Positions 1,226 through 47,300 of a stretch of 47,797 nucleotides of DNA are shown piece by piece; the stretch's first letter is position 1; each line of letters begins with the position of its first letter. The notes under the pieces were generated by a model that saw only the letters and a list, made by a program, of their open reading frames with translations, had not been told where the DNA came from and ran no database searches. This stretch comes from Malacoraja senta (taxonomy: Eukaryota). A program made the translations under genes and the position numbers. The stretch covers positions 62,001-109,797 of the forward strand of contig JAXLNO010005746.1 of NCBI GenBank assembly GCA_038087875.1. The letters run 5' to 3'.

Positions 1226-1231
1226 AACCTA

Positions 1232-1457: not shown

Positions 1458-1577
1458 AAACAAGAGTGAGGGTTAACTTCTGGATTCACCCTCAGACACA
1501 GACACATTACCTTGGTTTTACAGTAGAAATCCCTTCAAATGCTTTCATGAAGTTCTTTTCCAAAATAATTGCTATAT

Positions 1578-6345: not shown

Positions 6346-6749
6346 AGGTTTATTGAGCAATTCTTTGCAATAATTTCATTTTGCATTGCAACTTGCATTT
6401 CAACAGTGCATTAAAGGTGCTGGAAAAGTCTCGAGGTTCTTCACAGCACCATTGTCAGGTGGAATTTGGCATCGAATCACATGCTGGTTCGAGATACAGC
6501 ATGGAAACAGACCCTTCGGCCCACCGAGTCCACGCTGACCATCGATCACCTGTTCACACTAGTCCCACATTACACCGCTTTTGCATGCACTCCCTACACA
6601 TTGAGTGCAATTCGACAAGAGGGCCAATTAACCTACAGAGCCACACGTTTTGGGGATGTGGGAGGATGCCGGAGCACCCAGAGGAGACCCACGCGGTCAC
6701 AGGGAGAACGTGCAAACTCCACACCGATAGCGCCGGAGGTCAGAATTGA

Positions 6750-7860: not shown

Positions 7861-8184
7861 CAGACAGCACCCGTAGTCTGTCTAACAGTCGAACCTGTCT
7901 GTAAGCGCTGTAAGGCAGCAGCTCTACCACTGCGCCACCCTAGTCCACTAGTCCCACTTGCCCGCATTTGACCCATCTCCTCATATATTGGTAAATATCC
8001 ATTTTTTACCCTCAGCCCGAAGTAGTGTCTCGGCCGGAATACAAACATGCACTTTTTGCCTCCACAGATGCTGCCTGACCCGTTGAGTTTTTCAGGTGTT
8101 CTGCCTATTGTTCCAGATTCTAGTATATGCAATCTCCTTTGTCTTCTCCCTCACACAACCCTAATCCTACCTCAACAATGTTAT

Positions 8185-8705
8185 CTCACAGAAGCTGATG
8201 GGTATATGGAAGGAACATGTCCAGAGGAGCTAGTGGAGACAGGTACTATTAACAACATTTAAAAGCATTAGGACATGGTACGTGAATAGGAAAGGTTTGT
8301 AGGGACAGGGGTCAAACAAAGGCCTGATTTTTACGGTGGCGCAGCCGTAGAGTTGCTGCCTTACATTGTATAACAGCGCCAGATACCCGGGTTTGATCCT
8401 GGCTACAGGTGCTTGTCTGTACATAGTCTGTACTTTCTCCCAGTGACCTGCATGAGTTTTCTCCGAGAACTTCAGTTTCCTCCCACACTCCAAAGATGAA
8501 CAGCTTTGTAGGTTAATTGGGTTGGTGTAAATGTAAACATTTGTGTTGATGTGCGGGGATCACTGGACGGTGCGGACACGGTGGGCCGGAGGGCCTGTTT
8601 CCGCACTGTATCTCTAAACTAAACTAAACTAAAGAGGGACTAGCGTACATGGGACATCTTGATCGGCATAGGGCAAGTTGTTTCCGTGCTGTATCACTCT
8701 ATGAT
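8185..8705 (+). mobile_element. CR1 3' tail with a nested full V-SINE
   Basis: CR1 tail sequence lies on both sides of 8333-8633. Confidence 0.65.
8333..8633 (+). mobile_element. Full-length V-SINE (HE1-like, tRNA-derived); also 40691-40991
   Basis: tRNA-like head (acggtggcgcag...gggtttgatcc), V-domain (ttctcccagtgacc..tttcctcccacactccaaag), CR1-like tail ending (ctaaa)n. Confidence 0.85.
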
Positions 8706-8819
8706 TTTATGAAGCACATCCTCAAACTAAGCTTTACCCGGTCTCCGATGCTCAAATATGTGAATTGTCCTTCAAGGAGTTTATCTGGTGACGTGAGTTG
8801 ACTTATCTGATCGCGTTTG

Positions 8820-9160
8820 GCAATAGACAATAGACAATATGTGCAGGAGTAGGCCTTTCGGCTCTTCGAGCCAGCATTGCCATTCAATATGATCATGGCT
8901 GATCATCCACAATCAGTACCCCTTTCCTGCCTTCTCCCCATTTCCCTGACTCCGCCATCTTTAAGAGCCCTATCTAGCTCTCTCTTGAAAGTATCCAGAG
9001 AACCTGCCTCCACCGCCCTCTGAGGCAGAGGATTCCACAGACTCACAACTCTCTGTGTGAAAAAGTTCACACATTCCAGGAGTAGAATTTGGCCATTCGG
9101 CCCATCGAGTCTACTCCGCCATTCAAACATGGCTGATCTCTGCCTCCTAACCCCATTCAA
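8820..9160 (-). mobile_element. Two adjacent CR1 3' tail fragments
   Basis: Reverse-complement CR1 tails. ORF 8903-9160 includes FFTQRVVSLWNPLPQRAVEAGSL. Confidence 0.75.
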
Positions 9161-9369
9161 GTTCGGACACAGTGTGCCTGCATTTGGGGGAGGGGGTTGA
9201 GGGGGTGGGCAAGGGAATGTTTGCAGTGGCGGACAGAGCGCCAGTCAAGTGGGCAAATGTCACCAGGATGAAGCAGAGCTTCGAGGAGATGCTCCAATCC
9301 AGGCAACAGGAGAGCGTTGCAGCGCACTCCTGATAGGTGCATTGTCCGTGGTGAGGAGGCTGGGGGAGG

Positions 9370-9517
9370 TGGCAAGTGAGTCACCAAGTTAGTCTCGAAC
9401 CACTGCAAAGTCGTTTCCTGAGTAAACGGAAATTGACTGTTTGACTTCTGTTGTGAATGAGGAAGAGGACAACTCAAACGCAGTGCAGGGACCAAACCGA
9501 TCCAACGTAGCCGAGAC
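9370..9517 (+). promoter_or_regulatory. Putative TATA-less proximal promoter/5'UTR with AP-1 and Ets/PU.1-like motifs
   Basis: TGAGTCA 9377-9383, TTTCCTG 9414-9420, ACGGAAAT 9426-9433 and GAGGAAG 9459-9465 lie upstream of the leader ATG. Identical at 41728-41875. Motif match only. Confidence 0.35.
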
Positions 9518-9614
9518 ATGGCGGTGGGACAGGGAGAATTCACCCACCAGAAACGGCCCAGATCCAGGGGAACAGTCGCTCTGCTGGTTCTTGTCGCTGT
9601 TGGTCTCACACCAG
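9518..9614 (+). CDS. Exon 1, leader/signal peptide MAVGQGEFTHQKRPRSRGTVALLVLVAVGLTP(G)
   Basis: ATG in strong Kozak context (GAGACATGG), basic n-region, hydrophobic VALLVLVAVGL, phase-1 donor CAG|GTAAAT joining in frame to G-SWG of the V exon. Not present in the supplied ORF track. Confidence 0.75.
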
Positions 9615-12600
9615 GTAAATCGTTGTTTTACAAAATGCTCTGTTCTTTAGAATTATTTACCAGCGCCTTGAATTATTTGTAACCGAGGACTTCTCTGTAC
9701 TGTGTGGGGAGCTGATGATCAATTGCTTAACACTCGTTAGTTCCTGTAGAGACTTCCATCAGCGGCTGTTGTCGTGTTGTGTGCAGCCAAATCGCACACA
9801 GCTAGCTCCCTGTGGAGAAGGGAGATAACCATCTAGAGCTTGCCTGGCCTTGTGGACCTCATTGAAACTTACCGAATAATGAAGTTTAATGTTTAATACC
9901 GAATAATGAAGGCCTGGATAGAGTGGATGGGATGAGGATGTTTCCATTAATGGGAGAGTCTAGGACCAGAGGCCGCAGCCTGAGAATTAAAGTCCGCAGC
10001 TGGCCCTGTTGATCTTGGGTGTAGGGGTAACTCTTGGCCCCAGAACAGATAGTTTGCTCCACTATTCTGGTGCAAACTATCTACAGGTGAACTTTCTCAG
10101 TGACTTGAGAGAGCAGACAGCAGATCAGCTAAATGCCTCGGCAAAGTGACATCACCTCCAGCAGTGGTGATTCCCCTCAGTACCGCACTCCCTCTGTCCT
10201 CGAGCTTCGGGAGTGGGAGTTGAACCAACGACTCTCTGACTTTTGGTGTGGTTCAGTTAGCCTGGGACAGAAGTTCTCCTCTTCTACCCGACGAGAATTC
10301 TGCAACACCCTCCCTCGCTGTTCCCCCTCTGTGATTCCTCCTGCTCTCCGGCTCTGCGATCTACATTTCCTTATCACCATCTGCTTTGTTCTGTCGTTTT
10401 CACGCCTTACCTCTTGCATATCTCTTGACTTCCTCCACCCCCCGACACTCGGTCTGAAGAAGGGTCTCGACCCAAAACGTCACCCATTCCTTCTCTCCAT
10501 AGATGCCGCCTGACCCGCTGCGTTACTCCAGCATTTAGTGTCTATCAAAGACACACGGCACTCCCTCCACGCACTGCAATGGGAAATGTTGAACCTAAAC
10601 CTTAGCATATTCAAAGAAAAAACCTGTGAAAGCCAGCCGATGGGAACAGGCGGGCATCTCAAATGAGGAAGCACCAGAGTGACTGTCCAATTTAGCATTT
10701 GGAGAAGTTGTGGTAATCTCTCTGTAAAGACTGTCCAAACACATGGTGTCTTCACTCTAGTTTATTGCATACATTGTATTCGTATACACACATATTGCCC
10801 TAGCTGTTCGTGGTCCGTTACCGGAGCTAGAGAGCGAGCTAGGGGTGGGAAGGTTACATTTATACTGAAGCTAATGGGGAGTGGTTAGTAGAAGTGAGGT
10901 CACCATGTTAAAGGAACATGCACGGCTCTACATCTCCACTCTGAGAAAAGCCAGCTTCCTTACAACAGACTCTGCTGCTCGAGCTGTTCTTCACACCGTG
11001 CTTTCCCCAGCCTCTGAGTTCGGACCTGGACTGATCTGATGATGTGTCTCCACCCCAGCTCCTGAATCTGCAGAGTTTCACATGTGTTAGAGTCATAGTG
11101 ATACAGTGTGGAAACAGGCCCTTCGGCCCAACTTACCCACACCGGCCAACATGTCTCAGTAACACCTGTCCCACCTGTTTACGTTTGGTACATGTCCCTT
11201 CAAACCTGTCCTATCCATGTACCTGTCCAACTGTTTCTTAAATGATGGGATAGTCCTTGCCTCAACTATTTCCTCTGGCAGCTTGATCCATACACCGACC
11301 AGACTTTGTGTGAAAAAGACACCTCATGATTATTCCAGGTGGACGTGGAGTTTGAAACATCAGTGGCAGATCCAGCTTCCACCTCAGGCCGGGAAGTTTA
11401 GTTCAATGGGGCACAAAGTGCTGGCGTAACTCAGTAGGTCAGGCAGTATCTCATGGTCTTGACTTGAAACGTCACCTATCCATGTTCTCCACAGATGCTG
11501 CCTGACCTGCTGAGTCACCACTGGCTATTCAGCTTTAGTAAAACACAAAGTGCTGGAGTAACACTGCAGGTCAAGCTGCATCACTTGGTGACTTTCCTTT
11601 AGTGACTTTAGAGATACAGCACGGAAACAGGCCCTTTGGCCCACAAAGTCCACGCCGACCATCGATCACATGGCACAGTAACACTATCCTACACACGAGG
11701 AACAAATTACAATTTTAACATAAGCCAGTTAACCTACAAACCTGCATGTCTTTGGAGTGTGGGAGGAAACTGGAGAAAGCCCACGCTGTCACGGGGAGAA
11801 CGTACAAACTCCGTACAGACAGCACCCGAGGTTAGGATCAAACACGGGTCTCTGGCGCTGTAAGGCAGCAACTCTACCCCTGTGCCACTGTGCCACCATG
11901 TCTCTACCTGTAACATTACATATCCATGTTCTCCAGCGATGTTGCCTGACCTGCTGAGGCATCACAGGCAGCTGCCTATTCAGCTTTAGTAAAGCACAAA
12001 GTGCTGGAGTTCAAGTTCAAGTCCAAGTGAGTTTATTGTAATGTGTCCCTGATAGGACAATGAAATTCTTGCTTTGCTTCAGCACACAGAACATAGTAGG
12101 CATTTACTACAAAACAAATCAGTGTGTCCATATACCATACCATACCAGTAAGTCAGCAGGTCAGGCAGCATCTCTGGAGAACATGGATAGGTGACGTTTA
12201 CGGTTGAGACCTGAATAAGGGGTAGGCCATTTTGGACTCAAATGAGGAAAAACCTTTTCACCCAGAGAATTCCACTTTCTCCAGAGATAGTTCCTGACCC
12301 GTTGAGTTACTCCAGCACTTTGTGTCCTTTTGAGTATTAACCAGCATCTGCAGTTCCTTGTTTCTACTTGTTCAATGGGGAAGTGGGTTGTAGTGAGATT
12401 GAACACAGGGTGGGTCAGAGTGAGTGACAGGTTTGGCTTCCTGTCACATGACCACCACTCAGGTCAAGCCACGCCCACAGGGAAGGATGATCCGGGCGCC
12501 AGGTAGATTCAGAAGCACTTCTGCTTTCACTGGAACTTGGGGAACAATCCCGGTGAAATGGGAATTAACACCTGCGGGAAAAGCATTAAAGTGCAACAGG

Positions 12601-15600
12601 TTCTATGCAAAAGAAGAGAGACACAAAATGCTGGAGTAACTCAGCGGGACGGGCAGCATCTCTGGAGAGAAGGAATGGGTGAGGGAACATCACCTGTCGG
12701 TTTCTCCAGAGATGCTGGCTGCCCCGCTGAGTTACTCCAGCTCTTTGTGTCTATCTTTGGTGTAAACCAGCACCTGCAGTCCCTTGCTGCACATGATCTA
12801 TGCGAAACCATGAACCTGTCTGAACAGCACAAATGACATGTTTTTTATTGTTAAACCTCAGCTTGTGTTGCTGCAGTGTGAGTGATCTTTCATCATTAAT
12901 GTGCCCACAGGGTCATGGGGAATAACTGGACCCGAGGAGGTGAGGGGAGAGTTGGGGCAGTCGGTCACTGTGGAATGTCCATATGATCAGGAATACAGTG
13001 ACAACAGGAAGCTATGGAGTAAAGGTGATGATTACTGGAAATCATCTACCGTGGTTTCTACTGATCACCCACGACAAGGGGGAACATCGATGACTGATAA
13101 CAAAACAGAACAGATACTTTCAGTAACCATCAACAACCTGGAGAAGAGTGATGAAGGACGCTACTGGTGTGTGATAGGAAATGGAATATTGTCATTCAAT
13201 GAAAAGACCTCCATCTCATTGAAGGTTTCTGAAGGTACGTTGACGATCTCTCCTCACTCCCCCAGATGTGAAAATTCCAGCCTGGGATTTCCCGGCCTCG
13301 GTCCTGACGGTGCCACATCCCCGGGGGTCCGTGGGGGGGGTGGAGTTTGGGGGGAGGTGAGGGGGGGTAGCGGGGACCCGCTGCATGGGGCCACACCAAG
13401 ATCCCACTGTCCCAGGAGCAGTGTGGGGGGTGGGGGGGATCTCATCAATGGGGACCGGCGGTCCTGCTGCTGACGGTTCATTTCCCCAAACACGATCTCT
13501 CCGGGACCAGAACCTCTGGTGCCCCCTCACTGGAGCAGGGGGGGTGGAACCACCCCCTCACCCTCTCCCCCTTCCCGTCAATGTCACACCCACCACACAC
13601 ACAACATCTGAAGAAGGGTCCCAAGCCTATACATCGTCTATTCATTCCATCCACAGATGCTGCCTGACTTGCTGAGTTACTCCAGCACTTTGTGTATTGC
13701 TCAAGATTCCAACACCTGCAATTCCTTGTGTCTCACAAACTATGGTGATTCATGAGCTCAGTTTATTGTTGTCGCCTGTACTGAGGTACAGGGAAAAGCT
13801 TTTACCATGTTTCCAATGAGGGCCAAGTCATTGGGTATTTTAAGTGGAGATTGACATGTTCTTGATTAGTACGCATGTCAAGCGATATGAGGAGAAGGCA
13901 GGAGAATGGGGTTGAGAGGGAGAGATAGATCAGCCATGATTAAATGGCGGAGTAGACTCAATGGACCAAATGGCCTAATTTTGCCCCTATTATTTATGAA
14001 CTTATGAACTAAGAATCCGCATGATGTGAGTGATATAGACTTTACACTGAGCCACACAAACTGTACAAGATGAAATACTCAACGGGTCGGGCAGCATTTA
14101 TGGAGAGAGACGAGACTTAATGTTTCAGGTAGATACCTCCAACCAAATTGCATTATTTTCAATTCAGTCCACGTAATGAAAATAGTCCATGGATCCTCCC
14201 ACTCCCAAGTTCTTCTCCAACGTAGAAGACACTTGCCTAACTCCAGCAGCAGGCAGATAACACAGCCTGTGGGACTCTGAAGGGCATGAAAGAAGTCAAT
14301 GAATGCTTGCGACCATCCGGTGGCATCTTAATGGGTGAGCCTCCTGTCTAGATCAAGAGGCTTGGTCCATCTATGGTGGCCTCAGAAGGATCTTTGCCCA
14401 AATGTGTGGAGTCGGATTTGAACCCAGGAATCTCCCCACACAGAGCAAGAGCGTTCCCAACTGAGGCATCTCCCACACCTCACTAAAGAGGCACAGGACG
14501 TGCTCTCAGACATTGAATGTTCAAAAACTTCATTCACTTTATCTCCACAAGGGTCTCAAACAAGCCGCCCAGATATGATCATCACCACCGAGGCAGCAAG
14601 TTCCACTGAGTCTCTTGGTTCAACACCTCCAAACAGGTTAGTAACTCGAAGAGCCAACTCAGCCTCACCTGAGAACAAATTAGTTAAGTTCAGTTCAGCT
14701 CAGTTAAAAGATACAGCGTGGAAATGGACCCTTTGGCCCACCGAGTCCGCTCTGATCAGCGATCACCCCATACACTAGTTCTGTTCTACATACTAGGGGC
14801 AATTTACTACAAACCGGCATGTCTTTGGAATGTGGGAGGATACTGGAGAACCCAGAGTAAACTCTTGTGATCACAGGGAGAACATACAAACTATGTACTG
14901 ACAGCACCAGTAGTCCGGTAGGATCGTATCCTATTGTTAGTAAAATCATGCCCAGTACTTTGAGAAAGCGTGGCTGATCACATTCCAGTCCATTGATAAA
15001 TAGTCATTGGCCTTGATTAAAGTCCCTCTGTCCTTAGTACACCCAGTGGCCCTACCATTGTGAATGTCTACCCTTATTTGATGCCAAAAACAAATAACTT
15101 CACACTTATCATGGTTCAATACCGGCTGGCATTGCTCTGCCCAACATACCAGTTGCTTCTTATCCCTCTGTGGTCTATGATTATCGTACTATCCAAAATG
15201 CTACAATTTTGGTGTAATCTGTAAACACGTTAATCATACTTCCAACAATAACATCTAAGGCCGGCAGATGGGAATAGTGTCGATAAGGACATCTTGGTCG
15301 GCGTGGGGAAATTAGGTCCAAGGACATGTTTTCATGCTCTATGTCTGACCACCAACATGAACATCTAAGTTGTCAATGTATGTAGTCATGGAACACCTCC
15401 AAGGAATGGGTGCATGTTGCGATATAAACATCTTACCAATGTCTACGCCACAACCTTGGATCACACTGAATGATTCCGTGTGCAATATGATGGAAATAAT
15501 CTCCCAGCGTTGATCTTTGATAACTCTGTGTGGAAGTAATAATATTTCCTTGGATTTCCAGGGACATCGTGTTGAATGTTCGCCGTGTTTGGGGTGTGTC

Positions 15601-18600
15601 ACGCTGGGTACTCTTTGGAGTTCTGCTTCTCTTCCCGGTTTCCATCAGCTGTGTGACAACTTTTAAAAGGTAAAAGTTTGTAATCTCTTCACTCTGGTGA
15701 TGACATTAAATTCAATTGGAAATGATGGGAATTTACTTTAGAATTCTGGAGATAAAGTGTGGACATACAGTGCCCTCCATAATGTTTTGGACAAAGACCC
15801 TTCATTTATTTATTTGCCTCTGTATTCCACAATTTGAGATTTGTAATAGAAAAAAATCACATGTGGTGAAAGTGCACATGGACAGATTTTATTAAAGGGT
15901 ATTTTTATACATTTTGGTTTCACCATGTAGAGATTACAGCTGTGTTTATACACAGTCCCCCCATTTCAGGGCACCATAATGTTTTGGACTCATTGCTTCA
16001 CAGGTGTTTGTAATTGCTCAGGTGTGTTTAATTGCCTCCTCAATGCAGGGATAAGAAAGCTCTCAGCACCTAGTCTTTCCTCCAGTCTTTCCATCACATT
16101 TGGAAACTTTTATTGCTGTTTATCAACATGAGGACCAAAGTTGTGCCAATGAAAGTCAAAGAAGCCATTCTGAGACTGAGAAACAAGAATAAAACTGTTA
16201 GAAACATCAGCCAAACATTAGGCTTACCAAAATCAACTGTTTGGAACATCATTAAGAAGAAAGAGAGCACTGGTGAGCTTACTAATCGCAAAGGGAATGG
16301 CAGGCCAAGGAAAACATCAGGCCAAGATGACAAAAGAATTATCTCTATAAAAAAAAAAACCCCAAACACCTGTCCGACAGATCAGAAACACTCTTCAGGA
16401 GTCAGGCGTGGATTTGTCAATGACCACTGTCTGCAAAAGATTTCATGAACATAAATACGGAGGCTACACTGCAAGATGCAAACCACTGGTTAGCCGCAAA
16501 AGTAGGATGGCCGGCTTACAGTTTGCGAAGAAGTACTTAAAAGAGCAACCACAGTGCTGGAAAAAGGTCTTGTGGACAGATGAGATGTACAGGGTCTTGG
16601 TGAGACCACACCTGGAGTATTGCGTACAGTTTTGGTCTCCAAATCTGAGGAAGGACATTATAGCCATAGAGGGAGTGCAGAGAAGGTTTACCAGACTGAT
16701 TCCTGGGATGTCAGGACTTTCATATGAAGAAAGACTGGATAGACTTGGCTTATACTCGCTAGAATTTAGGAGATTGAGAGGGGATCTTATAGAAACGTAC
16801 AAAATTCTTATGGGGTTGGACAGGCTAGATGCAGGAAGATTGTTCCCGATGTTGGGGAAGTCCAGGACAAGGGGTCACAGCTTAAGGATAAGGGGGAAAT
16901 CCTTTAAGACCGAGATGAGGAAAAACTTTTTCACACAGAGAGTGGTGAATCTCTGGAACTCTCTGCCAAAGAGGGTAGTTGAGGCCAGTTCATTGGCTAT
17001 ATTTAAGAGGGAGTTAGATGTGGCCCTTGTGGCTAAGGGGATCAGGGGGTATGGAGAGAAGGCAGGTAACGGGATACTGAGTTGGATGATCAGCCATGAT
17101 CATATTGAATGGCGGTGCAGGCTCGAAGGGCCAAATGGCCTACTCCTGCACCTATTTTCTATGTATCTATGTACCTATGTAAGATTAACATATCAGAGTA
17201 ATGGCAAGAGCAAAGTATGGAGGAGGGAAGGAACTGCCCAAGATCTAAAGTATACCACCTCATCTGTGAAACACGGTGGTGGCGGTGTTATGTCCTGGGC
17301 ATGTATGGCTGCTGAAGGTACTGACCCATTTATCTTCCTTGGTAATGCAACTGCTGATGGTAGTAGCATAATGAATTCTGACATGTATAGAGACATCCTA
17401 TCTGCTAGAGGTTGACGGTTCATTCTACAGCAAGACAATGATTCCAAACATATTGCAAAAACAACAAAGGAATTTTTCAAAGCTAAAAAATGGTCAATTC
17501 TTGAGTGGCCAAGTCATTCTGAACCCAATTGAGCATGCCTTTTATATGCTGAAGAGAAAACCGAAGGTGACTCGCCCCCAAAACAAGCATAAGCTAAAGA
17601 TGGCTGCAATACAGGCCTGGCAGAGCATCACCAGAGAAGACACCCAGCAACTGGTGATGTCCATGAATCTCAGACTTCAGGCATTCATTCCATGCAAAGG
17701 ATATGCAACAAAATACTAAACATGACTACTTTCATTTACATGACATTGTTGTGTCCCAAACATTATGGTGCCCTGAACTGGACTATGTATAATCACTGCT
17801 GTAATTTCTACCTGGTGAAATCAAAATGTATAAAAATCTGAAAATGTGCACTTTAACATATGTGATTTTTTTTTCTATTACTATTCTCAAATTGTGGAGT
17901 ACAGAGGCAAATAAATAAATGATGGGTCTTTGTCCCAAACATTATGGAGGGCACTGTAGGCCCTACAGCCAACCAAATCCGCGCTGACCAATGATCACCC
18001 CGTACACTCGCACTATCCTACACATGAGGGACAATTTACAATTATACAGAAGCCAATTAACCTACAAAACTACACGTCTTTGGATTGTGGGAGGAAACCG
18101 GAGCACCCGGATAAAACCCACGCTGCCTTACAGCGCCAAACCCGGGTCTCTGGCGCTGTAAGGCAGTAACTCTACCGCTGCGCCACTGTGCCGCCCTGGG
18201 TCATTTCCTCGGGTAAAATTTGATGGTAGAGATTATAAACTGCGTTTTAATTGTTATTCAAGGAAAAAAACAGCCGAGATGTTGGAGATGGGGTCGGCAG
18301 CGGTGGAGGGAGGAGAAGAACAGTGCCGGTGAGCTGGCTGGGAGACGGCGTGGGAGGTGAGGGGAAAAGGGTGCGTTGGTTGGTCGAGGTGTGGGCGGAG
18401 TGCGAGTGGGCTGCTGGAGGCCCTGCAGCAGCCGGTGGATCGGGTGCCGCTGGAGGCCCCACAGAGGTCGGGGACGAGCGTGCGGAGCGGACACGTCCTG
18501 CAGCGGCACGGAGCGGCGGTGGAGGCACCAACAACATCGCCAGGCCAGGCCGACCCCTGCAACTCCCACCCAGTGCAGTCCCCACGACAACGAGACTTTA

Positions 18601-19079
18601 AGCCCAAAATATGACAATACTTTTTTATCAATTTGATGTTTAAGAATATAAGATACTGCCAGAAATGTGGCAACTCTAGTGTACTGTATCATATAATCTG
18701 CTATTAATACAATCTTGTTCTTAGCTTCAGCTGTGCTTATATAAAGTAAGATTTGTACTGAATTCTATGCAAAAGAAATTTCACTGTACCCATGTGCATG
18801 AGACAATCAAGTACCATTGAACCATTGAGCAATGGGGATATAAAAATGGTTACATGATTACAAGTATTGAACTTGGACACGCGTTAGAACAATAAGATAA
18901 AAATTAAGGGTAATCGTTATATCAATATTGTTGTTCTGATGGAATGACGTCCAATAATCATCGTTTAGCTTTTCAGGGCCAAAGAGGGTGTTCACCAGTT
19001 GCAGATGGACAAATCTCATCACCTTGACCCTACAGCATCACCACACCCCACCTATGTCCAATCTAACTTGACCACTTGA
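9518..19079 (+). CDS. Single-IgV immune receptor, CD300/pIgR/MDIR-like, putative activating type; 5-exon model join(9518-9614,12911-13234,14552-14636,15562-15669,18977-19079), 238 aa
   Basis: All introns are GT-AG with compatible phases (1,1,2,2). Exon lengths 97+324+85+108+103=717 nt give an open frame ending in TGA. Domain order is signal peptide, V-set Ig, S/T/P stalk, TM, short tail. Family is assigned from the GPEEV..G.SVTV.C / W.KG / D.G.YWC pattern; exact orthologue not determined. Confidence 0.8.
10125..10290 (-). mobile_element. Degenerate tRNA-derived SINE (possibly Deu/SacSINE-like); related fragment ~5060-5135
   Basis: gagtgggagttgaacc..ctctgact is a reverse B-box context shared by both fragments. 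Confidence 0.4.
11088..11310 (-). mobile_element. CR1 3' tail fragment in intron 1
   Basis: gtcatagtgatacagtgtggaaacaggcccttcggccc... matches the 1578-2100 family. Confidence 0.75.
12911..13234 (+). CDS. Exon 2, V-set immunoglobulin domain (CD300/pIgR-like)
   Basis: Acceptor cccacag|GG, donor GAAG|GTACGT, 324 nt. Encodes GSWGITGPEEVRGELGQSVTVECPY...KLWSKG...DNKT...LEKSDEGRYWC...SLKVSE with B-strand Cys, C-strand Trp and D-x-G-x-Y-x-C. Confidence 0.92.
13810..14010 (+). mobile_element. CR1 3' tail fragment in intron 2
   Basis: gaggccaagtcattgggtatt...gatcagccatgatt...ttatgaacttatgaac. Confidence 0.75.
14330..14474 (-). mobile_element. Degenerate tRNA-derived SINE in intron 2
   Basis: The reverse complement shows an A-box-like TGCCTCAGTTGG and a B-box GGTTCAAATCC. 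Confidence 0.5.
14552..14636 (+). CDS. Exon 3, Ser/Thr/Pro-rich stalk (GSQTSRPDMIITTEAASSTESLGSTPPN-R)
   Basis: Acceptor cactttatctccacaag|, donor AACAG|GTTAGT, phase 1 to 2, open frame. Confidence 0.75.
14940..15530 (-). mobile_element. Old, degenerate CR1 RT fragments in intron 3, interrupted by a plus-strand CR1 tail (~15260-15345)
   Basis: Minus-strand TYIDNLDVHVGG resembles the CR1 RT motif IYINDLD. Confidence 0.45.
15562..15669 (+). CDS. Exon 4, transmembrane (DIVLNVRRVWGVSRWVLFGVLLLFPVSISCVTTFK-R)
   Basis: Acceptor tttccttggatttccag|, donor AAAAG|GTAAAA, phase 2 to 2, hydrophobic segment with N-terminal Arg. Confidence 0.8.
16128..17719 (+). pseudogene. Tc1 transposase, frameshifted and interrupted by CR1
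   Basis: Paired-like HTH, GRPRKT, WTDE, KHGGG, QQDND and NPIEH (DDE triad). Confidence 0.9.
16586..17180 (+). mobile_element. 5'-truncated CR1 inserted directly after the WTDE codons of the Tc1 transposase
   Basis: Encodes YRVLVRPHLEYCVQFW...; tail ctatgtatctatgtacctatgt. Transposase sequence resumes at aagattaac. Confidence 0.92.
18977..19079 (+). CDS. Exon 5, cytoplasmic tail (AKEGVHQLQMDKSHHLDPTASPHPTYVQSNLTT*)
   Basis: Acceptor gtttagcttttcag|G, open in the required phase 2, in non-TE sequence, followed by AATAAA about 400 nt downstream. Confidence 0.55.
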
Positions 19080-19310: not shown

Positions 19311-19473
19311 GTTTGCAGACACGTCTGTACATCCTGACATTCACCCAAAAGACAGCAGTACATAGACTAGAACTCAAAGCAGGCTCTCCAGAATGTGAAC
19401 TTTTAACTTTACTACCAATTGAATTGTTGTGTAAAACCCTGCACATTGAATAATGATTAAAATAATCCAATGT

Positions 19474-19479
19474 AATAAA
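19474..19479 (+). terminator. Putative polyadenylation signal AATAAA of the receptor gene
   Basis: First canonical AATAAA I saw after exon 5. The paralogous block at ~6095 reads AATGAA instead. Confidence 0.45.
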
Positions 19480-22400
19480 AGATGCTGAATTTTTGTCATA
19501 AGATCATAAGTGATAAGGGTAGAATTAGTTTGGTTTATAGATACCGCATGGAAACAGGCCCATTGGCCCACCGAGTCCATGCCGACCATTGATCACCTGT
19601 ACACACTATGTTTAAGAAGAAACTGCAGATGCTGGAAAAGCGGTAGACAAAAACGATGAGTTTCTCTGACATTTTTGTCTACATGTACACACTAGTTCTG
19701 TTATCCCACTTTCTCATCCATTCCCTACACATTTGCGACAATCTTGCAGAGGTATTTAACCTACAAACTCGCATGTATTAGGGATGTGGGAGGAAACCGG
19801 AGCACCCAGAGGAGACCCACGCGGTCACAGGGAGAACGTGCAAACTCCACACTGATAGCGCCGGAGGTCAGAATCCAACTGGGGTCTCTGGGGGTGGTTG
19901 CAGTTCCACCTACAGCAAACCCAACCCCACAAATATCACCCAGAACAAGCCTCTCCATCACCAGTGTAGCAGTGTGACAACACAATGTGAGCAACTCACA
20001 ACAAAATAGGTTGAGAAATAGGAAGACACAAGGAAGTACAGATGCAGTGATATCTGATAGTCCGCTCGAGTAGATTGCAACCCAATGGTGGGAACATTGA
20101 ATTTTCTAGTTTTAAGTAATTAACCCACAACAATCTTTTCCACTAATCTCCGTCCCTTTCCACATCTATATATATATATATATATCCTTTCTTCCAGCTT
20201 CACATTTCATGCCTCTTCCATATCTCATATCACCATCTCACAGCCTTTTATCTTCTTTCCATCTCTGGCCTTCGTCCACCCATCAGCCAGTAACCCTCTC
20301 TCCCTCACCTGTATCCACCTATCACTTGCCAGGCTTCATCCTTCCCCCACCTCTCTCCCAGCTTTCTCCCCCCTACTACAATCAGCCTGAAGAAGGGTCC
20401 GAACCCAAAACGTCACCTATCCATGTTCTCTGGAGATGCTGCCTGGCCCATTGAGTTACTCCAGCATTATATGTCTGTTTTTGAGAAATAGGAAGTTGTG
20501 AGGTTGATAAGAAGATTTGAACAACAGTGTAAATATTTTGAAACCAAATCATTGGTTCCACGGGTTAGGGTTGTTATGACAGTATGCAGGGTGGGTTATC
20601 AGATCTGTGAGGTGTGGAGAACCATGGTCAAGTCCAAATCCACCCACATGTCACAGTGCCAGGGTGAAGGGTGAGTGGGGCAGAGCAGGGTGGGACACTG
20701 GCACCAGAGTTAAACTCATAGAGTCATATAGTGCAGAAACAGGCCCTTCTTCCCAACTTGACCATGCTGACCAAACTGCCCACCTACACTAGTAGTAGTG
20801 TAGTTACTATATGTAGTGTACCCCAGTGGTATGAACATTGACTTCTCCAATTTCAGGTGGTCCTTGCTTTCTCCCTCCTTCCCCTCCCCTTCCCAGCTCT
20901 CCCACAGCCTACTGTCACCTTCGCTTCCGTTCTTCTTCCTGCCTCCCGCCCCCACCTCCACATCAGTCTGAAGAAGGATCTCGACCCGAAACATCACCTA
21001 TTCCTTCGCTCCATAGATGCTGCCTCATCCGCTGAGTTTCTCCAGCATTTTTTACTACCTTCGTTTTTTCCAGCATCTGCAGTTCTTTCTTAAACCTAAA
21101 CTAGTTTAGTTTAGTTTAGAGATACAGCGTGGAAACTGGCCCTTCACCTACCGAGTCCGCACCGAACAGTGATCCCACGCATTAACATCCTACATGCACT
21201 GGGGACTATTTATACTTATACCAAGCCAACTAACCAACTAACCGATACGTTTTTGGAGTGTGGGAGGAAACTGAAGATCTCGGAGAAAACCCAGGCGGGG
21301 AGAACGTACAAACTCCCTAAACAAGAGTGAGGGTTAACTTCTGGATTCACCCTCAGACACACACACATTACCTTGGTTTTACAGTAGAAATCCCTTCAAA
21401 TGCTTTCATGAAGTTCTTTTCCAAAATAATTGCTATACACATAGAGTCATAGTGTGACTCAGTGTGGAAACAGGCCCTTCTGCCCAACTTGCCGACACCA
21501 GCCAACATGTCCCAGGCCAGTTCCACCTGCTCGCATTTGCCCCATATCCCTCCAAACCTGTCCTATCCAAGTACCCTATCTAACTGTATCTAAAACATTG
21601 GGATAGTCCCTGCCTCACTACCTCCTCTGGCAGTTTGTTCCATATACCCACCACCCTTTCTGTGAAAAAGTTACCCCTCAGATTCCTATTGAATCTTTTC
21701 CCCTTCACATTACACCTATGTCCTCTGGTCCCCGATTCACCTGCACTGGGAAAGTGACACTGTGCATCTACCCAATCTATTCCTCTTGTAATTTTATACA
21801 TCTCTATAAGATCACCCCTCATCCTCTGCGCTCCAAGGAATAGAATCCCAGCCTACTCAACCTCACTATAGCTCAGACCATGTAATCCTGGCAACATCCT
21901 CGTAAATCTTCTCTGTATCCTTTCCAGCTAGACAACATCTTTCCTATAACACGATGCTTTTGAAAGACCCATCTGGTTATTATATCAATTGATCACTAAT
22001 TACTGTTCTCACCTCTAATGACAAGAGCAGCTTAGGTTAACCAATAAAATATGTTTGTTAATAAACAGCTTTTTAAACAAAACCAGTTCTGCTGTTTGGC
22101 ATAATTCTATCCTAAAAGCAAGTGATTATACAATCCTTATACAATACTTGGGGTGCTGTATCAGGTAATATGGTTAATGTAGCTATTTATTGCAGATAAA
22201 TTGCAGGGGTGTGGAGGCAAGGTCAATGGATATTTTTAAGTTAGTTTTGATGTAGGAACAGGCCAGGGTAACATGTAGGCTATGAGAAAGATTAGTCTTT
22301 AGATTCTGGAGTAGTTCCTGAGGATTGGAGGGTAGCTAATGTAACCCCACTTTTTAAAAATGGAGGGAGAGAGAAAATGGGGAATTACAGTCCAGTTAGT

Positions 22401-28037: not shown

Positions 28038-28058
28038 CATATATATATACACATACAT

Positions 28059-28113
<55 letters not shown>

Positions 28114-41300: not shown

Positions 41301-44300
41301 TCCCTGACTCCGCCATCTTTAAGAGCCCTATCTAGCTCTCTCTTGAAAGTATCCAGAGAACCTGCCTCCACCGCCCTCTGAGGCAGAGGATTCCACAGAC
41401 TCACAACTCTCTGTGTGAAAAAGTTCACACATTCCAGGAGTAGAATTTGGCCATTCGGCCCATCGAGTCTACTCCGCCATTCAAACATGGCTGATCTCTG
41501 CCTCCTAACCCCATTCAAGTTCGGACACAGTGTGCCTGCATTTGGGGGAGGGGGTTGAGGGGGTGGGCAAGGGAATGTTTGCAGTGGCGGACAGAGCGCC
41601 AGTCAAGTGGGCAAATGTCACCAGGATGAAGCAGAGCTTCGAGGAGATGCTCCAATCCAGGCAACAGGAGAGCGTTGCAGCGCACTCCTGATAGGTGCAT
41701 TGTCCGTGGTGAGGAGGCTGGGGGAGGTGGCAAGTGAGTCACCAAGTTAGTCTCGAACCACTGCAAAGTCGTTTCCTGAGTAAACGGAAATTGACTGTTT
41801 GACTTCTGTTGTGAATGAGGAAGAGGACAACTCAAACGCAGTGCAGGGACCAAACCGATCCAACGTAGCCGAGACATGGCGGTGGGACAGGGAGAATTCA
41901 CCCACCAGAAACGGCCCAGATCCAGGGGAACAGTCGCTCTGCTGGTTCTTGTCGCTGTTGGTCTCACACCAGGTAAATCGTTGTTTTACAAAATGCTCTG
42001 TTCTTTAGAATTATTTACCAGCGCCTTGAATTATTTGTAACCGAGGACTTCTCTGTACTGTGTGGGGAGCTGATGATCAATTGCTTAACACTCGTTAGTT
42101 CCTGTAGAGACTTCCATCAGCGGCTGTTGTCGTGTTGTGTGCAGCCAAATCGCACACAGCTAGCTCCCTGTGGAGAAGGGAGATAACCATCTAGAGCTTG
42201 CCTGGCCTTGTGGACCTCATTGAAACTTACCGAATAATGAAGTTTAATGTTTAATACCGAATAATGAAGGCCTGGATAGAGTGGATGGGATGAGGATGTT
42301 TCCATTAATGGGAGAGTCTAGGACCAGAGGCCGCAGCCTGAGAATTAAAGTCCGCAGCTGGCCCTGTTGATCTTGGGTGTAGGGGTAACTCTTGGCCCCA
42401 GAACAGATAGTTTGCTCCACTATTCTGGTGCAAACTATCTACAGGTGAACTTTCTCAGTGACTTGAGAGAGCAGACAGCAGATCAGCTAAATGCCTCGGC
42501 AAAGTGACATCACCTCCAGCAGTGGTGATTCCCCTCAGTACCGCACTCCCTCTGTCCTCGAGCTTCGGGAGTGGGAGTTGAACCAACGACTCTCTGACTT
42601 TTGGTGTGGTTCAGTTAGCCTGGGACAGAAGTTCTCCTCTTCTACCCGACGAGAATTCTGCAACACCCTCCCTCGCTGTTCCCCCTCTGTGATTCCTCCT
42701 GCTCTCCGGCTCTGCGATCTACATTTCCTTATCACCATCTGCTTTGTTCTGTCGTTTTCACGCCTTACCTCTTGCATATCTCTTGACTTCCTCCACCCCC
42801 CGACACTCGGTCTGAAGAAGGGTCTCGACCCAAAACGTCACCCATTCCTTCTCTCCATAGATGCCGCCTGACCCGCTGCGTTACTCCAGCATTTAGTGTC
42901 TATCAAAGACACACGGCACTCCCTCCACGCACTGCAATGGGAAATGTTGAACCTAAACCTTAGCATATTCAAAGAAAAAACCTGTGAAAGCCAGCCGATG
43001 GGAACAGGCGGGCATCTCAAATGAGGAAGCACCAGAGTGACTGTCCAATTTAGCATTTGGAGAAGTTGTGGTAATCTCTCTGTAAAGACTGTCCAAACAC
43101 ATGGTGTCTTCACTCTAGTTTATTGCATACATTGTATTCGTATACACACATATTGCCCTAGCTGTTCGTGGTCCGTTACCGGAGCTAGAGAGCGAGCTAG
43201 GGGTGGGAAGGTTACATTTATACTGAAGCTAATGGGGAGTGGTTAGTAGAAGTGAGGTCACCATGTTAAAGGAACATGCACGGCTCTACATCTCCACTCT
43301 GAGGAAAGCCAGCTTCCTTACAACAGACTCTGCTGCTCGAGCTGTTCTTCACACCGTGCTTTCCCCAGCCTCTGAGTTCGGACCTGGACTGATCTGATGA
43401 TGTGTCTCCACCCCAGCTCCTGAATCTGCAGAGTTTCACATGTGTTAGAGTCATAGTGATACAGTGTGGAAACAGGCCCTTCGGCCCAACTTACCCACAC
43501 CGGCCAACATGTCTCAGTAACACCTGTCCCACCTGTTTACGTTTGGTACATGTCCCTTCAAACCTGTCCTATCCATGTACCTGTCCAACTGTTTCTTAAA
43601 TGATGGGATAGTCCTTGCCTCAACTATTTCCTCTGGCAGCTTGATCCATACACCGACCAGACTTTGTGTGAAAAAGACACCTCATGATTATTCCAGGTGG
43701 ACGTGGAGTTTGAAACATCAGTGGCAGATCCAGCTTCCACCTCAGGCCGGGAAGTTTAGTTCAATGGGGCACAAAGTGCTGGCGTAACTCAGTAGGTCAG
43801 GCAGTATCTCATGGTCTTGACTTGAAACGTCACCTATCCATGTTCTCCACAGATGCTGCCTGACCTGCTGAGTCACCACTGGCTATTCAGCTTTAGTAAA
43901 ATACAAAGTGCTGGAGTAACACTGCAGGTCAAGCTGCATCACTTGGTGACTTTCCATTAGTGACTTTAGAGATACAGCACGGAAACAGGCCCTTTGGCCC
44001 ACAAAGTCCACGCCGACCATCGATCACATGGCACAGTAACACTATCCTACACACGAGGAACAAATTACAATTTTAACATAAGCCAGTTAACCTACAAACC
44101 TGCATGTCTTTGGAGTGTGGGAGGAAACTGGAGAAAGCCCACGCTGTCACGGGGAGAACGTACAAACTCCGTACAGACAGCACCCGAGGTTAGGATCAAA
44201 CACGGGTCTCTGGCGCTGTAAGGCAGCAACTCTACCCCTGTGCCACTGTGCCACCATGTCTCTACCTGTAACATTACATATCCATGTTCTCCAGCGATGT

Positions 44301-47300
44301 TGCCTGACCTGCTGAGGCATCACAGGCAGCTGCCTATTCAGCTTTAGTAAAGCACAAAGTGCTGGAGTTCAAGTTCAAGTCCAAGTGAGTTTATTGTAAT
44401 GTGTCCCTGATAGGACAATGAAATTCTTGCTTTGCTTCAGCACACAGAACATAGTAGGCATTTACTACAAAACAAATCAGTGTGTCCATATACCATACCA
44501 TACCAGTAAGTCAGCAGGTCAGGCAGCATCTCTGGAGAACATGGATAGGTGACGTTTACGGTTGAGACCTGAATAAGGGGTAGGCCATTTTGGACTCAAA
44601 TGAGGAAAAACCTTTTCACCCAGAGAATTCCACTTTCTCCAGAGATAGTTCCTGACCCGTTGAGTTACTCCAGCACTTTGTGTCCTTTTGAGTATTAACC
44701 AGCATCTGCAGTTCCTTGTTTCTACTTGTTCAATGGGGAAGTGGGTTGTAGTGAGATTGAACACAGGGTGGGTCAGAGTGAGTGACAGGTTTGGCTTCCT
44801 GTCACATGACCACCACTCAGGTCAAGCCACGCCCACAGGGAAGGATGATCCGGGCGCCAGGTAGATTCAGAAGCACTTCTGCTTTCACTGGAACTTGGGG
44901 AACAATCCCGGTGAAATGGGAATTAACACCTGCGGGAAAAGCATTAAAGTGCAACAGGTTCTATGCAAAAGAAGAGAGACACAAAATGCTGGAGTAACCT
45001 CAGCGGGACGGGCAGCATCTCTGGAGAGAAGGAATGGGTGAGGGAACATCACCTGTCGGTTTCTCCAGAGATGCTGGCTGCCCCGCTGAGTTACTCCAGC
45101 TCTTTGTGTCTATCTTTGGTGTAAACCAGCACCTGCAGTCCCTTGCTGCACATGATCTATGCGAAACCATGAACCTGTCTGAACAGCACAAATGACATGT
45201 TTTTTATTGTTAAACCTCAGCTTGTGTTGCTGCAGTGTGAGTGATCTTTCATCATTAATGTGCCCACAGGGTCATGGGGAATAACTGGACCCGAGGAGGT
45301 GAGGGGAGAGTTGGGGCAGTCGGTCACTGTGGAATGTCCATATGATCAGGAATACAGTGACAACAGAAGCTATGGAGTAAAGGTGATGATTACTGGAAAT
45401 CATCTACCGTGGTTTCTACTGATCACCCACGACAAGGGGGAACATCGATGACTGATAACAAAACAGAACAGATACTTTCAGTAACCATCGACAAACTGGA
45501 GAAGAGTGATGAAGGACGCTACTGGTGTGTGATAGGAAAGGCAATAGTGTCATTCAATGAAAAGACCTCCATCTCATTGAAGGTTTCTGAAGGTACATTG
45601 ACGATCTCTCCTCACTCTCCCAGATGTGAAAATTCCAGCCTGGGGATTTCCCGGCCTCGGTCATGACGGTGCCACATCCCCGGGGGTCCGTGGGGGGGAG
45701 GAGTTTGGGGGGAGGTGAGGGGGGGTAGGGGGGACCCGCTGCATGGGGCCACACCAAGATCCCACTGTCCCAGGAGCAGTGTGGGGGGTGGGGGGGATCT
45801 CATCAATGGGGACCGGCGGTCCTGCTGCTGACGGTTCATTTCCCCAAACACGATCTCTCCGGGACCAGAACCTCTGGTGCCCCCTCACTGGAGCAGGGGG
45901 GGTGGAACCACCCCCTCACCCTCTCCCCCTTCCCGTCAATGTCACACCCACCACACACACAACATCTGAAGAAGGGTCCCCAAGCCTATACATCGTCTAT
46001 TCATTCCATCCACAGATGCTGCCTGACTTGCTGAGTTACTCCAGCACTTTGTGTATTGCTCAAGATTCCAACACCTGCAATTCCTTGTGTCTCACAAACT
46101 ATGGTGATTCATGAGCTCAGTTTATGTTGTCGCCTGTACTGAGGTACAGGGAAAAGCTTTTACCATGTTTCCAATGAGGGCCAAGTCATTGGGTATTTTA
46201 AGTGGAGATTGACATGTTCTTGATTAGTACGCATGTCAAGCGATATGAGGAGAAGGCAGGAGAATGGGGTTGAGAGGGAGAGATAGATCAGCCATGATTA
46301 AATGGCGGAGTAGACTCAATGGACCAAATGGCCTAATTTTGCCCCTATTATTTATGAACTTATGAACTAAGAATCCGCATGATGTGAGTGATATAGACTT
46401 TACACTGAGCCACACAAACTGTACAAGATGAAATACTCAACGGGTCGGGCAGCATTTATGGAGAGAGACGAGACTTAATGTTTCAGGTAGATACCTCCAA
46501 CCAAATTGCATTATTTTCAATTCAGTCCACGTAATGAAAATAGTCCATGGATCCTCCCACTCCCAAGTTCTTCTCCAACGTAGAAGACACTTGCCTAACT
46601 CCAGCAGCAGGCAGACAACACAGCCTGTGGGACTCTGAAGGGCATGAAAGAAGTCAATGAATGCTTGCGACCATCCGGTGGCATCTTAATGGGTGAGCCT
46701 CCTGTCTAGATCAAGAGGCTTGGTCCATCTATGGTGGCCTCAGAAGGATCTTTGCCCAAATGTGTGGAGTCGGATTTGAACCCAGGAATCTCCCCACACA
46801 GAGCAAGAGCGTTCCCAACTGAGGCATCTCCCACACCTCACTAAAGAGGCACAGGACGTGCTCTCAGACATTTAATGTTCAAAAACTTCATTCACTTTAT
46901 CTCCACAAGGGTCTCAAACAAGCCGCCCAGATATGATCATCACCACCGAGGCAGCAAGTTCCACTGAGTCTCTTGGTTCAACACCTCCAAACAGGTTAGT
47001 AACTCGAAGAGCCAACTCAGCCTCACCTGAGAACAAATTAGTTAAGTTCAGTTCAGCTCAGTTAAAAGATACAGCGTGGAAATGGACCCTTTGGCCCACC
47101 GAGTCCGCTCTGATCAGCGATCACCCCATACACTAGTTCTGTTCTACACACTAGGGGCAATTTACTACAAACCGGCATGTCTTTGGAATGTGGGAGGATA
47201 CTGGAGAACCCAGAGTAAACTCTTGTGATCACAGGGAGAACATACAAACTATGTACTGACAGCACCAGTAGTCCGGTAGGATCGTATCCTATTGTTAGTA

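What the first reader, a model, noticed from the sequence alone, without database searches (positions are those of the whole stretch)
9518..19079. Complete five-exon CD300/pIgR/MDIR-like immune receptor within TE-dense sequence
Seen: leader, IgV, stalk, TM and tail exons join with GT-AG introns in phases 1,1,2,2 into one 238-aa ORF. The ORF track shows only the V and stalk exons, as read-through ORFs. Established: this architecture typifies CD300/pIgR/TREM-type receptors and the skate MDIR family, which form fast-evolving paired-receptor clusters. Inference: this is a lineage-specific, possibly unannotated activating member in a tandem array.
Basis: partly seen in the sequence, partly recalled or inferred. 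Interest (0 to 1): 0.8.

Follow-up and report, generated by a model that had tools for sequence, protein, structure and literature searches.

The report
Skate CD300-like short-tailed receptor gene

Summary
Five GT-AG exons at the stated coordinates join in phases 1,1,2,2 into a 238-aa ORF.

Exons 1-4 (leader, IgV, stalk, membrane span) match two annotated Amblyraja radiata proteins exon for exon. Both are named "CMRF35-like molecule 3". The V domain is closest to CD300LF, CD300A and pIgR by sequence and by predicted fold.

The V exon evolves with dN/dS of about 2. The leader (0.28) and the TM exon (0.57) are conserved. This fits a working, fast-evolving receptor family.

The fifth exon is doubtful. 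It carries a stop in one paralogue, loses its only tyrosine in three copies, and matches no protein among 1.84 billion representatives.

"Activating" is plausible but not shown. The tail is short and has no ITIM. An invariant Arg sits at the outer edge of the TM, and ITIM-tailed relatives exist in rays and sharks.

The tandem array is real: period 32.4 kb, at least 4 units on this 110-kb contig and 2 on the chromosome scaffold.

No RNA data were reachable. The scan has already described this family on another piece of this genome (s1-140103).

The parts
9518..9614 (+). Exon 1: start codon and signal peptide. It has a charged n-region, a 12-residue hydrophobic core (TVALLVLVAVGL) and ends TPG. 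The intron phase is 1.
   Evidence: It is 100% identical in protein to the leader of A. radiata P0002. Across paralogues pN/pS is 0.28.
12911..13234 (+). Exon 2: V-set Ig domain of the CD300/pIgR type, phase 1-1. The canonical Cys pair is present. The second (C-C') cysteine pair typical of CD300/pIgR is absent.
   Evidence: Pfam V-set 2.7e-13. PDB sequence hits to pIgR and CD300. AlphaFold model with pLDDT 94, best fold match CD300LF at TM 0.9. Alignment A1. Median dN/dS about 2.1.
14552..14636 (+). Exon 3: short Ser/Thr/Pro-rich stalk (28 codons). Phase 1 in, phase 2 out.
   Evidence: The same short stalk exon occurs in two A. radiata genes of locus L043 at 81-85% aa identity. A longer version occurs in P0002.
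15562..15669 (+). Exon 4: membrane-proximal segment and transmembrane helix (...RRVWGVSRWVLFGVLLLFPVSISCVTTFK). An invariant Arg sits at the outer edge of the hydrophobic core. Phase 2-2.
   Evidence: It is 94-97% identical to the TM of P0001 and P0002. The genome holds 10 copies, all open. pN/pS is 0.57.
18263..18332 (+). Most likely last coding exon. It has an AAG|G acceptor in phase 2, 22 codons (KKTAEMLEMGSAAVEGGEEQCR) and a TGA stop at 18330-18332. It also carries a possible G|GTGAGC donor at 18329.
   Evidence: It is homologous to the C-terminus of annotated A. radiata P0002 and ends at the same stop. The P0002 gene range in L043 ends exactly there. It is kept open in 6 of the 7 homologous copies in paralogues and A. 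radiata.
18977..19079 (+). It may be 3' UTR, an optional sixth exon or an alternative last exon.
   Evidence: It is in frame after exon 4, or after 18263-18328. It is conserved at 93-97% nt, no better than the flanking non-coding DNA. All 4-7 substitutions against A. radiata are non-synonymous. One paralogue has a TAG at codon 3, and the Tyr is lost in three copies. It gave no hit among 1.84 billion protein representatives.
19456..19479 (+). First canonical poly(A) signals after the coding region (ATTAAA at 19456, AATAAA at 19474).
   Evidence: Pattern only, no RNA evidence.
15680..18260 (.). Transposon fill of intron 4: a Tc1/mariner-like transposase fragment interrupted by another repeat. 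It is absent from the A. radiata intron, which is 573 nt.
   Evidence: HTH_Tnp_Tc3_2 hit. Very high contig depth in the DNA runs. Exon spacing in L043.
41876..46994 (+). Next tandem unit (offset about 32,358). Leader 41876-41972, V exon 45270-45592 with a 1-bp deletion (frameshift) at 45365, stalk 46910-46994. The contig ends at 47797, before the TM exon.
   Evidence: contig length 109,797.

Best explanation
The stretch holds an intact gene of a skate. It encodes a small type I membrane receptor: signal peptide, one CD300/pIgR-like V domain, a short O-glycan-type stalk, one membrane span and a short cytoplasmic tail.

It is one unit of a very recent tandem array with a 32.4-kb repeat. Each unit carries one gene plus about 22 kb of transposons. 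The array belongs to an elasmobranch-wide family of paired receptors.

The coding region most likely ends in the exon at 18263-18332, giving 227 aa, as in the annotated thorny-skate orthologue.

Inferred mechanism: the variable V domain, under diversifying selection, binds a fast-changing ligand. The tail has no tyrosine motif. Signalling, if any, would run through the conserved arginine at the outer end of the membrane span, pairing with an Asp-bearing ITAM adaptor of the FcR-gamma/CD3-zeta type. This gene would then be the 'on-switch' partner of the ITIM-tailed relatives.

Shown: the gene structure of exons 1-4, the family, the selection pattern and the array. Inferred: expression, the choice of tail exon and adaptor coupling.
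For: - The exons, splice sites and phases check out.
- A. radiata proteins P0001 and P0002 ('CMRF35-like molecule 3') share the leader (100%), V (72-76%), stalk and TM (94-97%).
- The P0002 gene in L043 has the same five-exon layout and ends at the homologue of 18263-18332.
- The V domain is V-set, with pIgR/CD300 sequence hits and CD300LF as best fold match.
- V exon dN/dS has a median of 2.1, and 98% of 87 pairs exceed 1. Four disjoint pairs give a combined p of 0.0026. Leader pN/pS is 0.28 and TM 0.57.
- ITIM-type relatives with the same leader and V occur in Hemitrygon, Pristis and Pristiophorus. A two-V form with that other TM occurs in A. radiata.
- The TM Arg is invariant in all 10 genomic copies and in A. 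radiata.
- The genome encodes a TCR_zetazeta-type adaptor TM exon with Asp, at 58 bits.
- Array: V exons lie every 32.37 kb on C5746 (4 units) and on C5 (2 units). The units are 99.8% identical.
Against: - No RNA evidence exists. The only runs that hold the sequence behave as DNA and show no spliced joints.
- The choice between tail exons rests on one automatic annotation in another species. Both tail candidates evolve neutrally.
- The Arg lies at the edge of the hydrophobic core, not inside it, so it may be an ordinary flanking charge.
- The second disulfide typical of CD300/pIgR V domains is missing.
- The next unit in the window has a frameshifted V exon, so some array members are decaying or mis-assembled.
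Confidence: 0.66

Rival explanations
1. Exon 4 splices directly to 18977, giving a 238-aa protein with a 34-residue tail that contains one tyrosine.
For: The CAG|G acceptor is in phase, the frame is open and the stop is present. The acceptor, frame and stop are kept in most paralogues and in A. radiata. The region is low-copy and is not a transposon.
Against: - An upstream in-phase acceptor at 18263 opens the exon that the A. radiata annotation uses.
- Conservation equals that of the surrounding introns.
- It has 0 synonymous against 4-7 non-synonymous changes.
- One paralogue with an intact TM exon has a TAG at codon 3. The Tyr is lost in three copies and the stop is lost in one.
- No protein with this peptide exists among 1.84 billion representatives.
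- An AG lies 9 nt upstream of the acceptor.
Confidence: 0.13
2. The gene has six exons. The piece 18263-18328 is an internal 66-nt exon (phase 2-2) that uses the G|GTGAGC donor and splices to 18977. This gives 260 aa, with both pieces in the tail.
For: The join is in frame. The GT donor overlaps the TGA and is conserved in 7 of 8 copies. In one A. radiata copy the stop is lost (TGG) but the GT is kept.
Against: The annotated P0002 stops at the TGA. Paralogue L052 lost the GT, keeps the stop, and has a TAG early in the downstream piece. No protein carries the downstream peptide.
Confidence: 0.17
3. The copy is a silent or decaying duplicate, a young pseudogene in an unstable array, and not a working receptor.
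For: No RNA evidence was found. The neighbouring unit carries a frameshift in its V exon. Intron 4 has taken up 2 kb of transposon. The copies are too young (0.1-0.2% apart) for selection to have removed a dead one.
Against: - All exons are open with consensus splice sites in this unit and in four of the five other units.
- The near-identical copy on C5 (0.1% apart) is also intact.
- Differences between units are concentrated in the V exon and are overwhelmingly non-synonymous.
Confidence: 0.15
4. The protein works without an ITAM adaptor. It would be a non-signalling binding, decoy or adhesion receptor. The Arg is only a stop-transfer/flanking charge, so 'activating' is the wrong label.
For: The Arg sits outside the 20-residue hydrophobic core, next to another RR pair. 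The complex prediction gave no answer. A 2014 survey found no FcR-gamma in sharks (PMC4016189).
Against: - The Arg and the whole TM are conserved while the V domain and the tail drift.
- Arg two to four residues into the span is the usual position in FcR-gamma-coupled receptors (own knowledge).
- An Asp-bearing zeta/gamma-type TM exon is present in this genome.
- ITIM-tailed partners exist.
Confidence: 0.3

Closest known systems
Amblyraja radiata 'CMRF35-like molecule 3' (P0002, 246 aa; P0001, 226 aa; automatic NCBI annotation)
   Same: The leader is identical and the V type is the same (72-76% identity). The stalk and the TM exon with its Arg are the same (94-97%). The five-exon layout and intron phases match. 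The last exon is homologous to 18263-18332.
   Different: It is a different species. Introns are 90-94% identical. The V domain is strongly diverged. The stalk is shorter than in P0002. Genes lie about 10.7 kb apart in A. radiata, against 32.4-kb units here because of transposon fill.
Mammalian CD300 (CMRF35-like) family, e.g. CD300LF/CLM-1, CD300A/IRp60, and the activating CD300 members
   Same: It has a single V domain of the same fold (TM-score 0.88-0.93, 32-33% identity). The leader/V/stalk/TM/tail exon plan is the same. The family holds ITIM-tailed and short-tailed members.
   Different: It lacks the second C-C' disulfide. The charged residue is an Arg at the TM edge, not a mid-membrane Lys or Glu. 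Orthology to any one CD300 gene is not shown. The ligand is unknown.
Polymeric immunoglobulin receptor (pIgR)
   Same: The V domain gives the strongest summed sequence match to pIgR domains (1e-31). Ray relatives are even named 'pIgR-like'.
   Different: It has one V domain instead of two to five. It has a short tail with no transcytosis signals. It is a multi-copy, fast-evolving gene. It is not a pIgR.
Skate MDIR (modular domain immune-type receptors, clearnose skate; cited in PMC3031540)
   Same: Both are skate multigene families of activating/inhibitory Ig receptors with CD300/TREM/pIgR-like domains. A very large cluster of more distant V exons lies within 1 Mb on the same scaffold.
   Different: No MDIR sequence could be compared here. 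The MDIRs are described as modular proteins of one to six domains (own recollection). This gene has a single V domain.

Membership tests
CD300/CMRF35-like receptors (pIgR-type V) | One V-set Ig domain with the canonical B-F disulfide | tested here: met
   Pfam V-set scores 2.7e-13. Cys22 and Cys86 are invariant in alignment A1. The model has pLDDT 94.
CD300/CMRF35-like receptors (pIgR-type V) | V domain closer to CD300/pIgR than to TREM, antibody or TCR V domains | tested here: met
   By sequence: pIgR 1e-31, CD300LF 1e-14, CD300A 2.5e-10, TREM and antibody V about 1e-5. In the Foldseek search, ranks 1-10 are CD300LF, followed by pIgR D1, CD300A and TREM.
CD300/CMRF35-like receptors (pIgR-type V) | Second intradomain disulfide between the C and C' strands | tested here: not met
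   Both positions are Ser/Lys here (LWSKG...WKSS). The Cys pair is present in the Mobula and Hemitrygon relatives. Only the first Cys is present in P0002 and P0007. This is a secondary loss within the family.
CD300/CMRF35-like receptors (pIgR-type V) | Leader / V (phase 1-1) / stalk / TM / cytoplasmic exon plan | tested here: met
   The same plan is seen in the annotated A. radiata gene.
Activating member of a paired-receptor family | Close relatives with the same ectodomain type but ITIM-bearing tails | tested here: met
   P0005, P0006 and P0007 carry VxYxxV and SxYxxL motifs behind a different TM. None lies in this window.
Activating member of a paired-receptor family | Basic residue within the transmembrane helix | tested here: inconclusive
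   The Arg lies directly before the 20-residue hydrophobic core (SRWVLFG...). It is invariant in 10 genomic copies and in A. radiata. Its depth in the membrane cannot be decided from sequence.
Activating member of a paired-receptor family | Short cytoplasmic tail without ITIM or ITSM | tested here: met
   No ITIM or ITSM occurs in any of the three tail models. The only Tyr (HPTYVQSN) fits no motif and is not conserved.
Activating member of a paired-receptor family | Physical association with an ITAM adaptor (FcR-gamma, DAP12, CD3-zeta) | not testable with these tools
   An adaptor-type TM exon exists in the genome. The complex prediction gave no verdict.
pIgR proper | Two to five tandem V domains and a long tail with sorting signals | tested here: not met
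   There is a single V exon per gene and a tail of 24-57 residues.
Skate MDIR | Sequence membership in one of the MDIR domain subfamilies | not tested
   No MDIR sequence was returned by the protein searches. The original paper is not in the library.

The most novel reading that the evidence does not exclude
The short-tailed TM/tail module with the boundary arginine may be a skate-lineage invention. Grafted onto an old elasmobranch CD300-like ectodomain, it would have created a new FcR-gamma-coupled activating branch. That branch would now be expanding by unequal crossing-over, with 2 versus at least 4 units between haplotypes and conversion tracts that shuffle the ligand-binding loops. It would be a living example of how activating partners of inhibitory receptors arise in a cartilaginous fish.
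Probability: 0.25. Interest if true: 0.5.

Novelty: new member of a known kind. Interest (0 to 1): 0.3.

Why it matters
The finding adds an apparently unannotated, intact member to the CD300/pIgR-like paired-receptor family of cartilaginous fish. It also documents the family's dynamics in fine detail:

- a 32-kb tandem unit;
- a likely copy-number difference between haplotypes;
- conversion tracts confined to the V exon region;
- dN/dS of about 2 in the V domain, next to a conserved leader and membrane span.

This is useful for annotating skate immune genes and for studies of how paired receptors evolve. It does not change what is known about the family.

Tried and rejected
- RNA evidence: two searches for runs found only three runs of unrecorded kind. 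Laid on 13080-19079, they cover introns and repeats like DNA and show no exon-exon joints.
- Complex prediction of the TM exon with two copies of the FcR-gamma-like TM exon gave a score of 0.02, with no verdict either way. It is not used as evidence.
This is only weak evidence, because only cluster representatives are held.
- Search for the TM/tail module in 5.8 billion proteins found only the two A. radiata proteins.
- Inhibitory-type TM or ITIM exons were sought in the window by tblastn with P0003 and P0005-P0007. None was found.
- dN/dS on the two tail candidates has too few sites to discriminate.
The tail regions were obtained through a DNA search instead.
- MDIR comparison: no sequences and no paper could be obtained.
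Full report
**1. Observation**

Exon 1 (9518-9614) starts at an ATG and ends CAG|GTAAAT. Exon 2 (12911-13234), exon 3 (14552-14636), exon 4 (15562-15669) and exon 5 (18977-19079) each follow an AG. All but the last precede a GT. The lengths (97, 324, 85, 108, 103 nt) give intron phases 1,1,2,2 and a 717-nt reading frame of 238 codons plus TGA.

**2. What the exons encode**

The V exon translation is a V-set Ig domain (Pfam 2.7e-13). Against all solved structures its best sequence matches are:
- pIgR, 1e-31 summed over five domains;
- CD300LF/CLM-1, 1.2e-14;
- CD300A, 2.5e-10;
- TREM and antibody V domains, only about 1e-5.

An AlphaFold model built on an alignment of 19 family V domains is confident (pLDDT 94). 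Its nearest folds are CD300LF (TM-score 0.88-0.93, 32-33% identity), then pIgR D1, CD300A and TREM.

One family hallmark is missing. The second C-C' disulfide of CD300/pIgR domains is replaced by Ser/Lys here. It is still present in manta and stingray relatives.

**3. Support from other species**

The closest proteins in 5.8 billion are two Amblyraja radiata predictions, both named "CMRF35-like molecule 3". They are P0001 (226 aa) and P0002 (246 aa). They share the leader (P0002 is 100% identical), the V domain (72-76%), the stalk and the membrane exon (94-97%).

The P0002 gene in its genomic locus L043 has the same exon layout, and its blocks map one to one onto the window's exons 1-4. Exons 1-4 are thus confirmed by an independent annotation.

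No protein identical to the window's product is in that collection, so the gene is unannotated there. Introns of the window and of A. radiata are 90-94% identical. The window therefore comes from another, fairly close, skate species.

**4. The last exon**

Its C-terminus (...KRTAETLEMGSAVVEEGAEQRR) is homologous to window 18263-18332. That exon has an acceptor AAG|G at 18262/18263 in the same phase 2, 22 codons, and a TGA at the same place. The recorded A. radiata gene range ends exactly at that stop.

The evidence against it as coding sequence is as follows.
- Its conservation (93-97% nt) is no better than that of neighbouring non-coding DNA.
- All 4-7 substitutions against the A. radiata copies are non-synonymous.
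- One paralogue with an intact TM exon has a TAG at its third codon, and another has lost the stop.
- The single tyrosine is lost in three copies.
- Its 33-residue peptide finds nothing among 1.84 billion protein representatives.

The upstream exon is also weakly constrained, with pN about equal to pS. It additionally carries a good donor (G|GTGAGC) overlapping its stop. Three in-frame products are therefore possible:
- 227 aa, like A. radiata;
- 260 aa, with both pieces;

I rate them about 0.5, 0.17 and 0.13. The remaining probability covers other splice forms or no stable transcript at all. The first poly(A) signals lie at 19456-19479. None of the tails has an ITIM or ITSM.

**5. Selection**

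Across 14 V exons (array units, more distant paralogues, A. radiata) the median pairwise dN/dS is 2.1, and 98% of 87 pairs are above 1. Four disjoint pairs give pN/pS of 1.6-2.5, with a combined one-sided p of 0.0026. The changes concentrate in the CDR1-like, C-C' and F-G loop regions. In contrast, the leader has pN/pS 0.28 and the TM exon 0.57. This is the pattern of a functional receptor family under diversifying selection on its binding face.

**6. Paired-receptor context and mechanism**

The same leader and V type occur in Hemitrygon, Mobula, Pristis and Pristiophorus proteins. In Hemitrygon, Pristis and Pristiophorus they are joined to a different membrane span (WQVVL...) and long tails with VxYxxV and SxYxxL motifs, so these are inhibitory-type partners. 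A. radiata P0003 has two V domains on that other span.

The window's TM/tail module was found only in the two A. radiata proteins and in 10 genomic copies in this genome, all within this gene cluster. Its Arg (G-V-S/L-R-W-V-L-F-G) is invariant. It sits at the outer edge of the 20-residue hydrophobic core. From my own knowledge, this resembles the Arg position in FcR-gamma-coupled receptors such as Fc-alpha-RI, NKp46, OSCAR and GPVI.

The genome does encode a TCR_zetazeta-family TM exon with the Asp (58 bits...CYVLDAILFIYG...YCRLK) at C5:19.86 Mb. This weakens the older claim that sharks lack FcR-gamma (PMC4016189). Coupling itself is not shown. A complex prediction returned no verdict. "Activating" is therefore a reasonable inference, at about 0.45-0.5, and not a finding.

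**7. The array**

The window is the last 47.8 kb of a 109,797-bp contig, C5746. V exons lie at 10177, 42542, 74913 (this gene) and 107272 of that contig, a period of 32.37 kb. The 82.9-Mb scaffold C5 has two such units, at 736917 and 704552 on the minus strand.
- Within the window, 1-15439 and 32369-47797 are 99.77% identical.
- This unit differs by 0.10% from the C5 unit at 704 kb. Unit 1 differs by 0.08% from the C5 unit at 737 kb. Units 1 and 3 differ by 1.8%.
- C5746 is therefore probably the other haplotype, or an uncollapsed version, of the C5 array with two extra units.
- Of the 35 differences between the two window copies, 13 fall in 13007-13371. Five are non-synonymous V-exon changes, one is a 1-bp deletion that frameshifts the second copy, and seven lie in the intron just behind.
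- In that tract units 2 and 4 carry the unit-1 variants. This points to a conversion or recombination tract rather than to point selection alone.

Each unit holds one gene. The rest is retroelement sequence (RVT_1 hits, an LTR-like repeat pair, and an AT-rich element at 24-29 kb). Intron 4 has gained about 2 kb of Tc1/mariner-like and other repeats relative to A. radiata.

**8. What could not be done**

No RNA run for this organism was reachable. The three runs that hold the sequence cover introns and repeats and show no splice joints. MDIR sequences and the MDIR paper were not available, so that membership is untested.

An earlier follow-up in this scan (s1-140103) described the same family on another piece of this genome. 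It came to the same reading: ITIM and Arg-TM versions, already annotated in relatives.

**9. Verdict**

This is a real, probably functional, short-tailed CD300/pIgR-like receptor gene in a young tandem array. Exons 1-4 are correct and exon 5 is probably misplaced. The activating role is plausible but unproven. It is a new member of a known kind and of modest interest.

Noticed in passing
window 13007-13371 versus 45365-45729: 13 of the 35 differences between the two 15.4-kb copies lie in this 365-bp tract. They are a 1-bp deletion that frameshifts the second V exon, five non-synonymous V-exon changes and seven intron changes. Units 2 and 4 carry unit-1-type variants here. The tract therefore looks like gene conversion or recombination that extends beyond the exon.
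   Followed up: partly
G000 contig C5746 (109,797 bp) versus C5:698,500-740,900: The small contig has four 32.4-kb units and the chromosome scaffold has two. Matching units differ by only 0.08-0.10%. This is either copy-number variation between haplotypes or a collapsed array on C5.
   Followed up: partly
G000 C5:0.82-1.77 Mb and contigs C1219, C1824, C1977, C4994: More than 100 further V-type exons lie here, with 29-39% identity to this V domain and many in regular repeats. They form a very large receptor cluster next to this gene family. It is probably the modular (V plus C2) receptors noted elsewhere in the scan.
   Followed up: no
G000 C5:19864556-19864642 (L058:1492-1581): This is a TCR_zetazeta-family transmembrane exon with the conserved Asp and a C-terminal YCRLK. 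It looks more like FcR-gamma than CD3-zeta (from memory). It was the only such hit in the genome. A 2014 survey reported no FcR-gamma in sharks.
   Followed up: partly
window 23861-29578, minus strand: This is an AT-rich block (28-31% GC) with five long ORFs on the minus strand, one of them a reverse transcriptase (RVT_1, 5e-31). It is a fairly intact retroelement inserted between two copies of another repeat.
   Followed up: partly
window 1-912 and 6750-7628 (also 19706-20803, 32369-33278, 38933-40009): These are direct repeats of about 0.9 kb at 91-92% identity. They flank about 5.8 kb that contains RT-like ORFs, an LTR-retrotransposon-like arrangement repeated within each 32-kb unit.
   Followed up: no
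window 18350-18830: This G-rich segment lies between the two candidate tail exons. It has long open frames on both strands and matches dispersed copies on many scaffolds at 70-80% identity. It is an old interspersed repeat and not part of the gene.
   Followed up: partly
L043 (A. radiata CM021389.1:34,491,254-34,519,993): Two further genes of the family flank P0002 at about 10.7-kb spacing, but they are not among the called genes of that record. In the upstream one the stop of the terminal exon is changed to TGG.
   Followed up: partly
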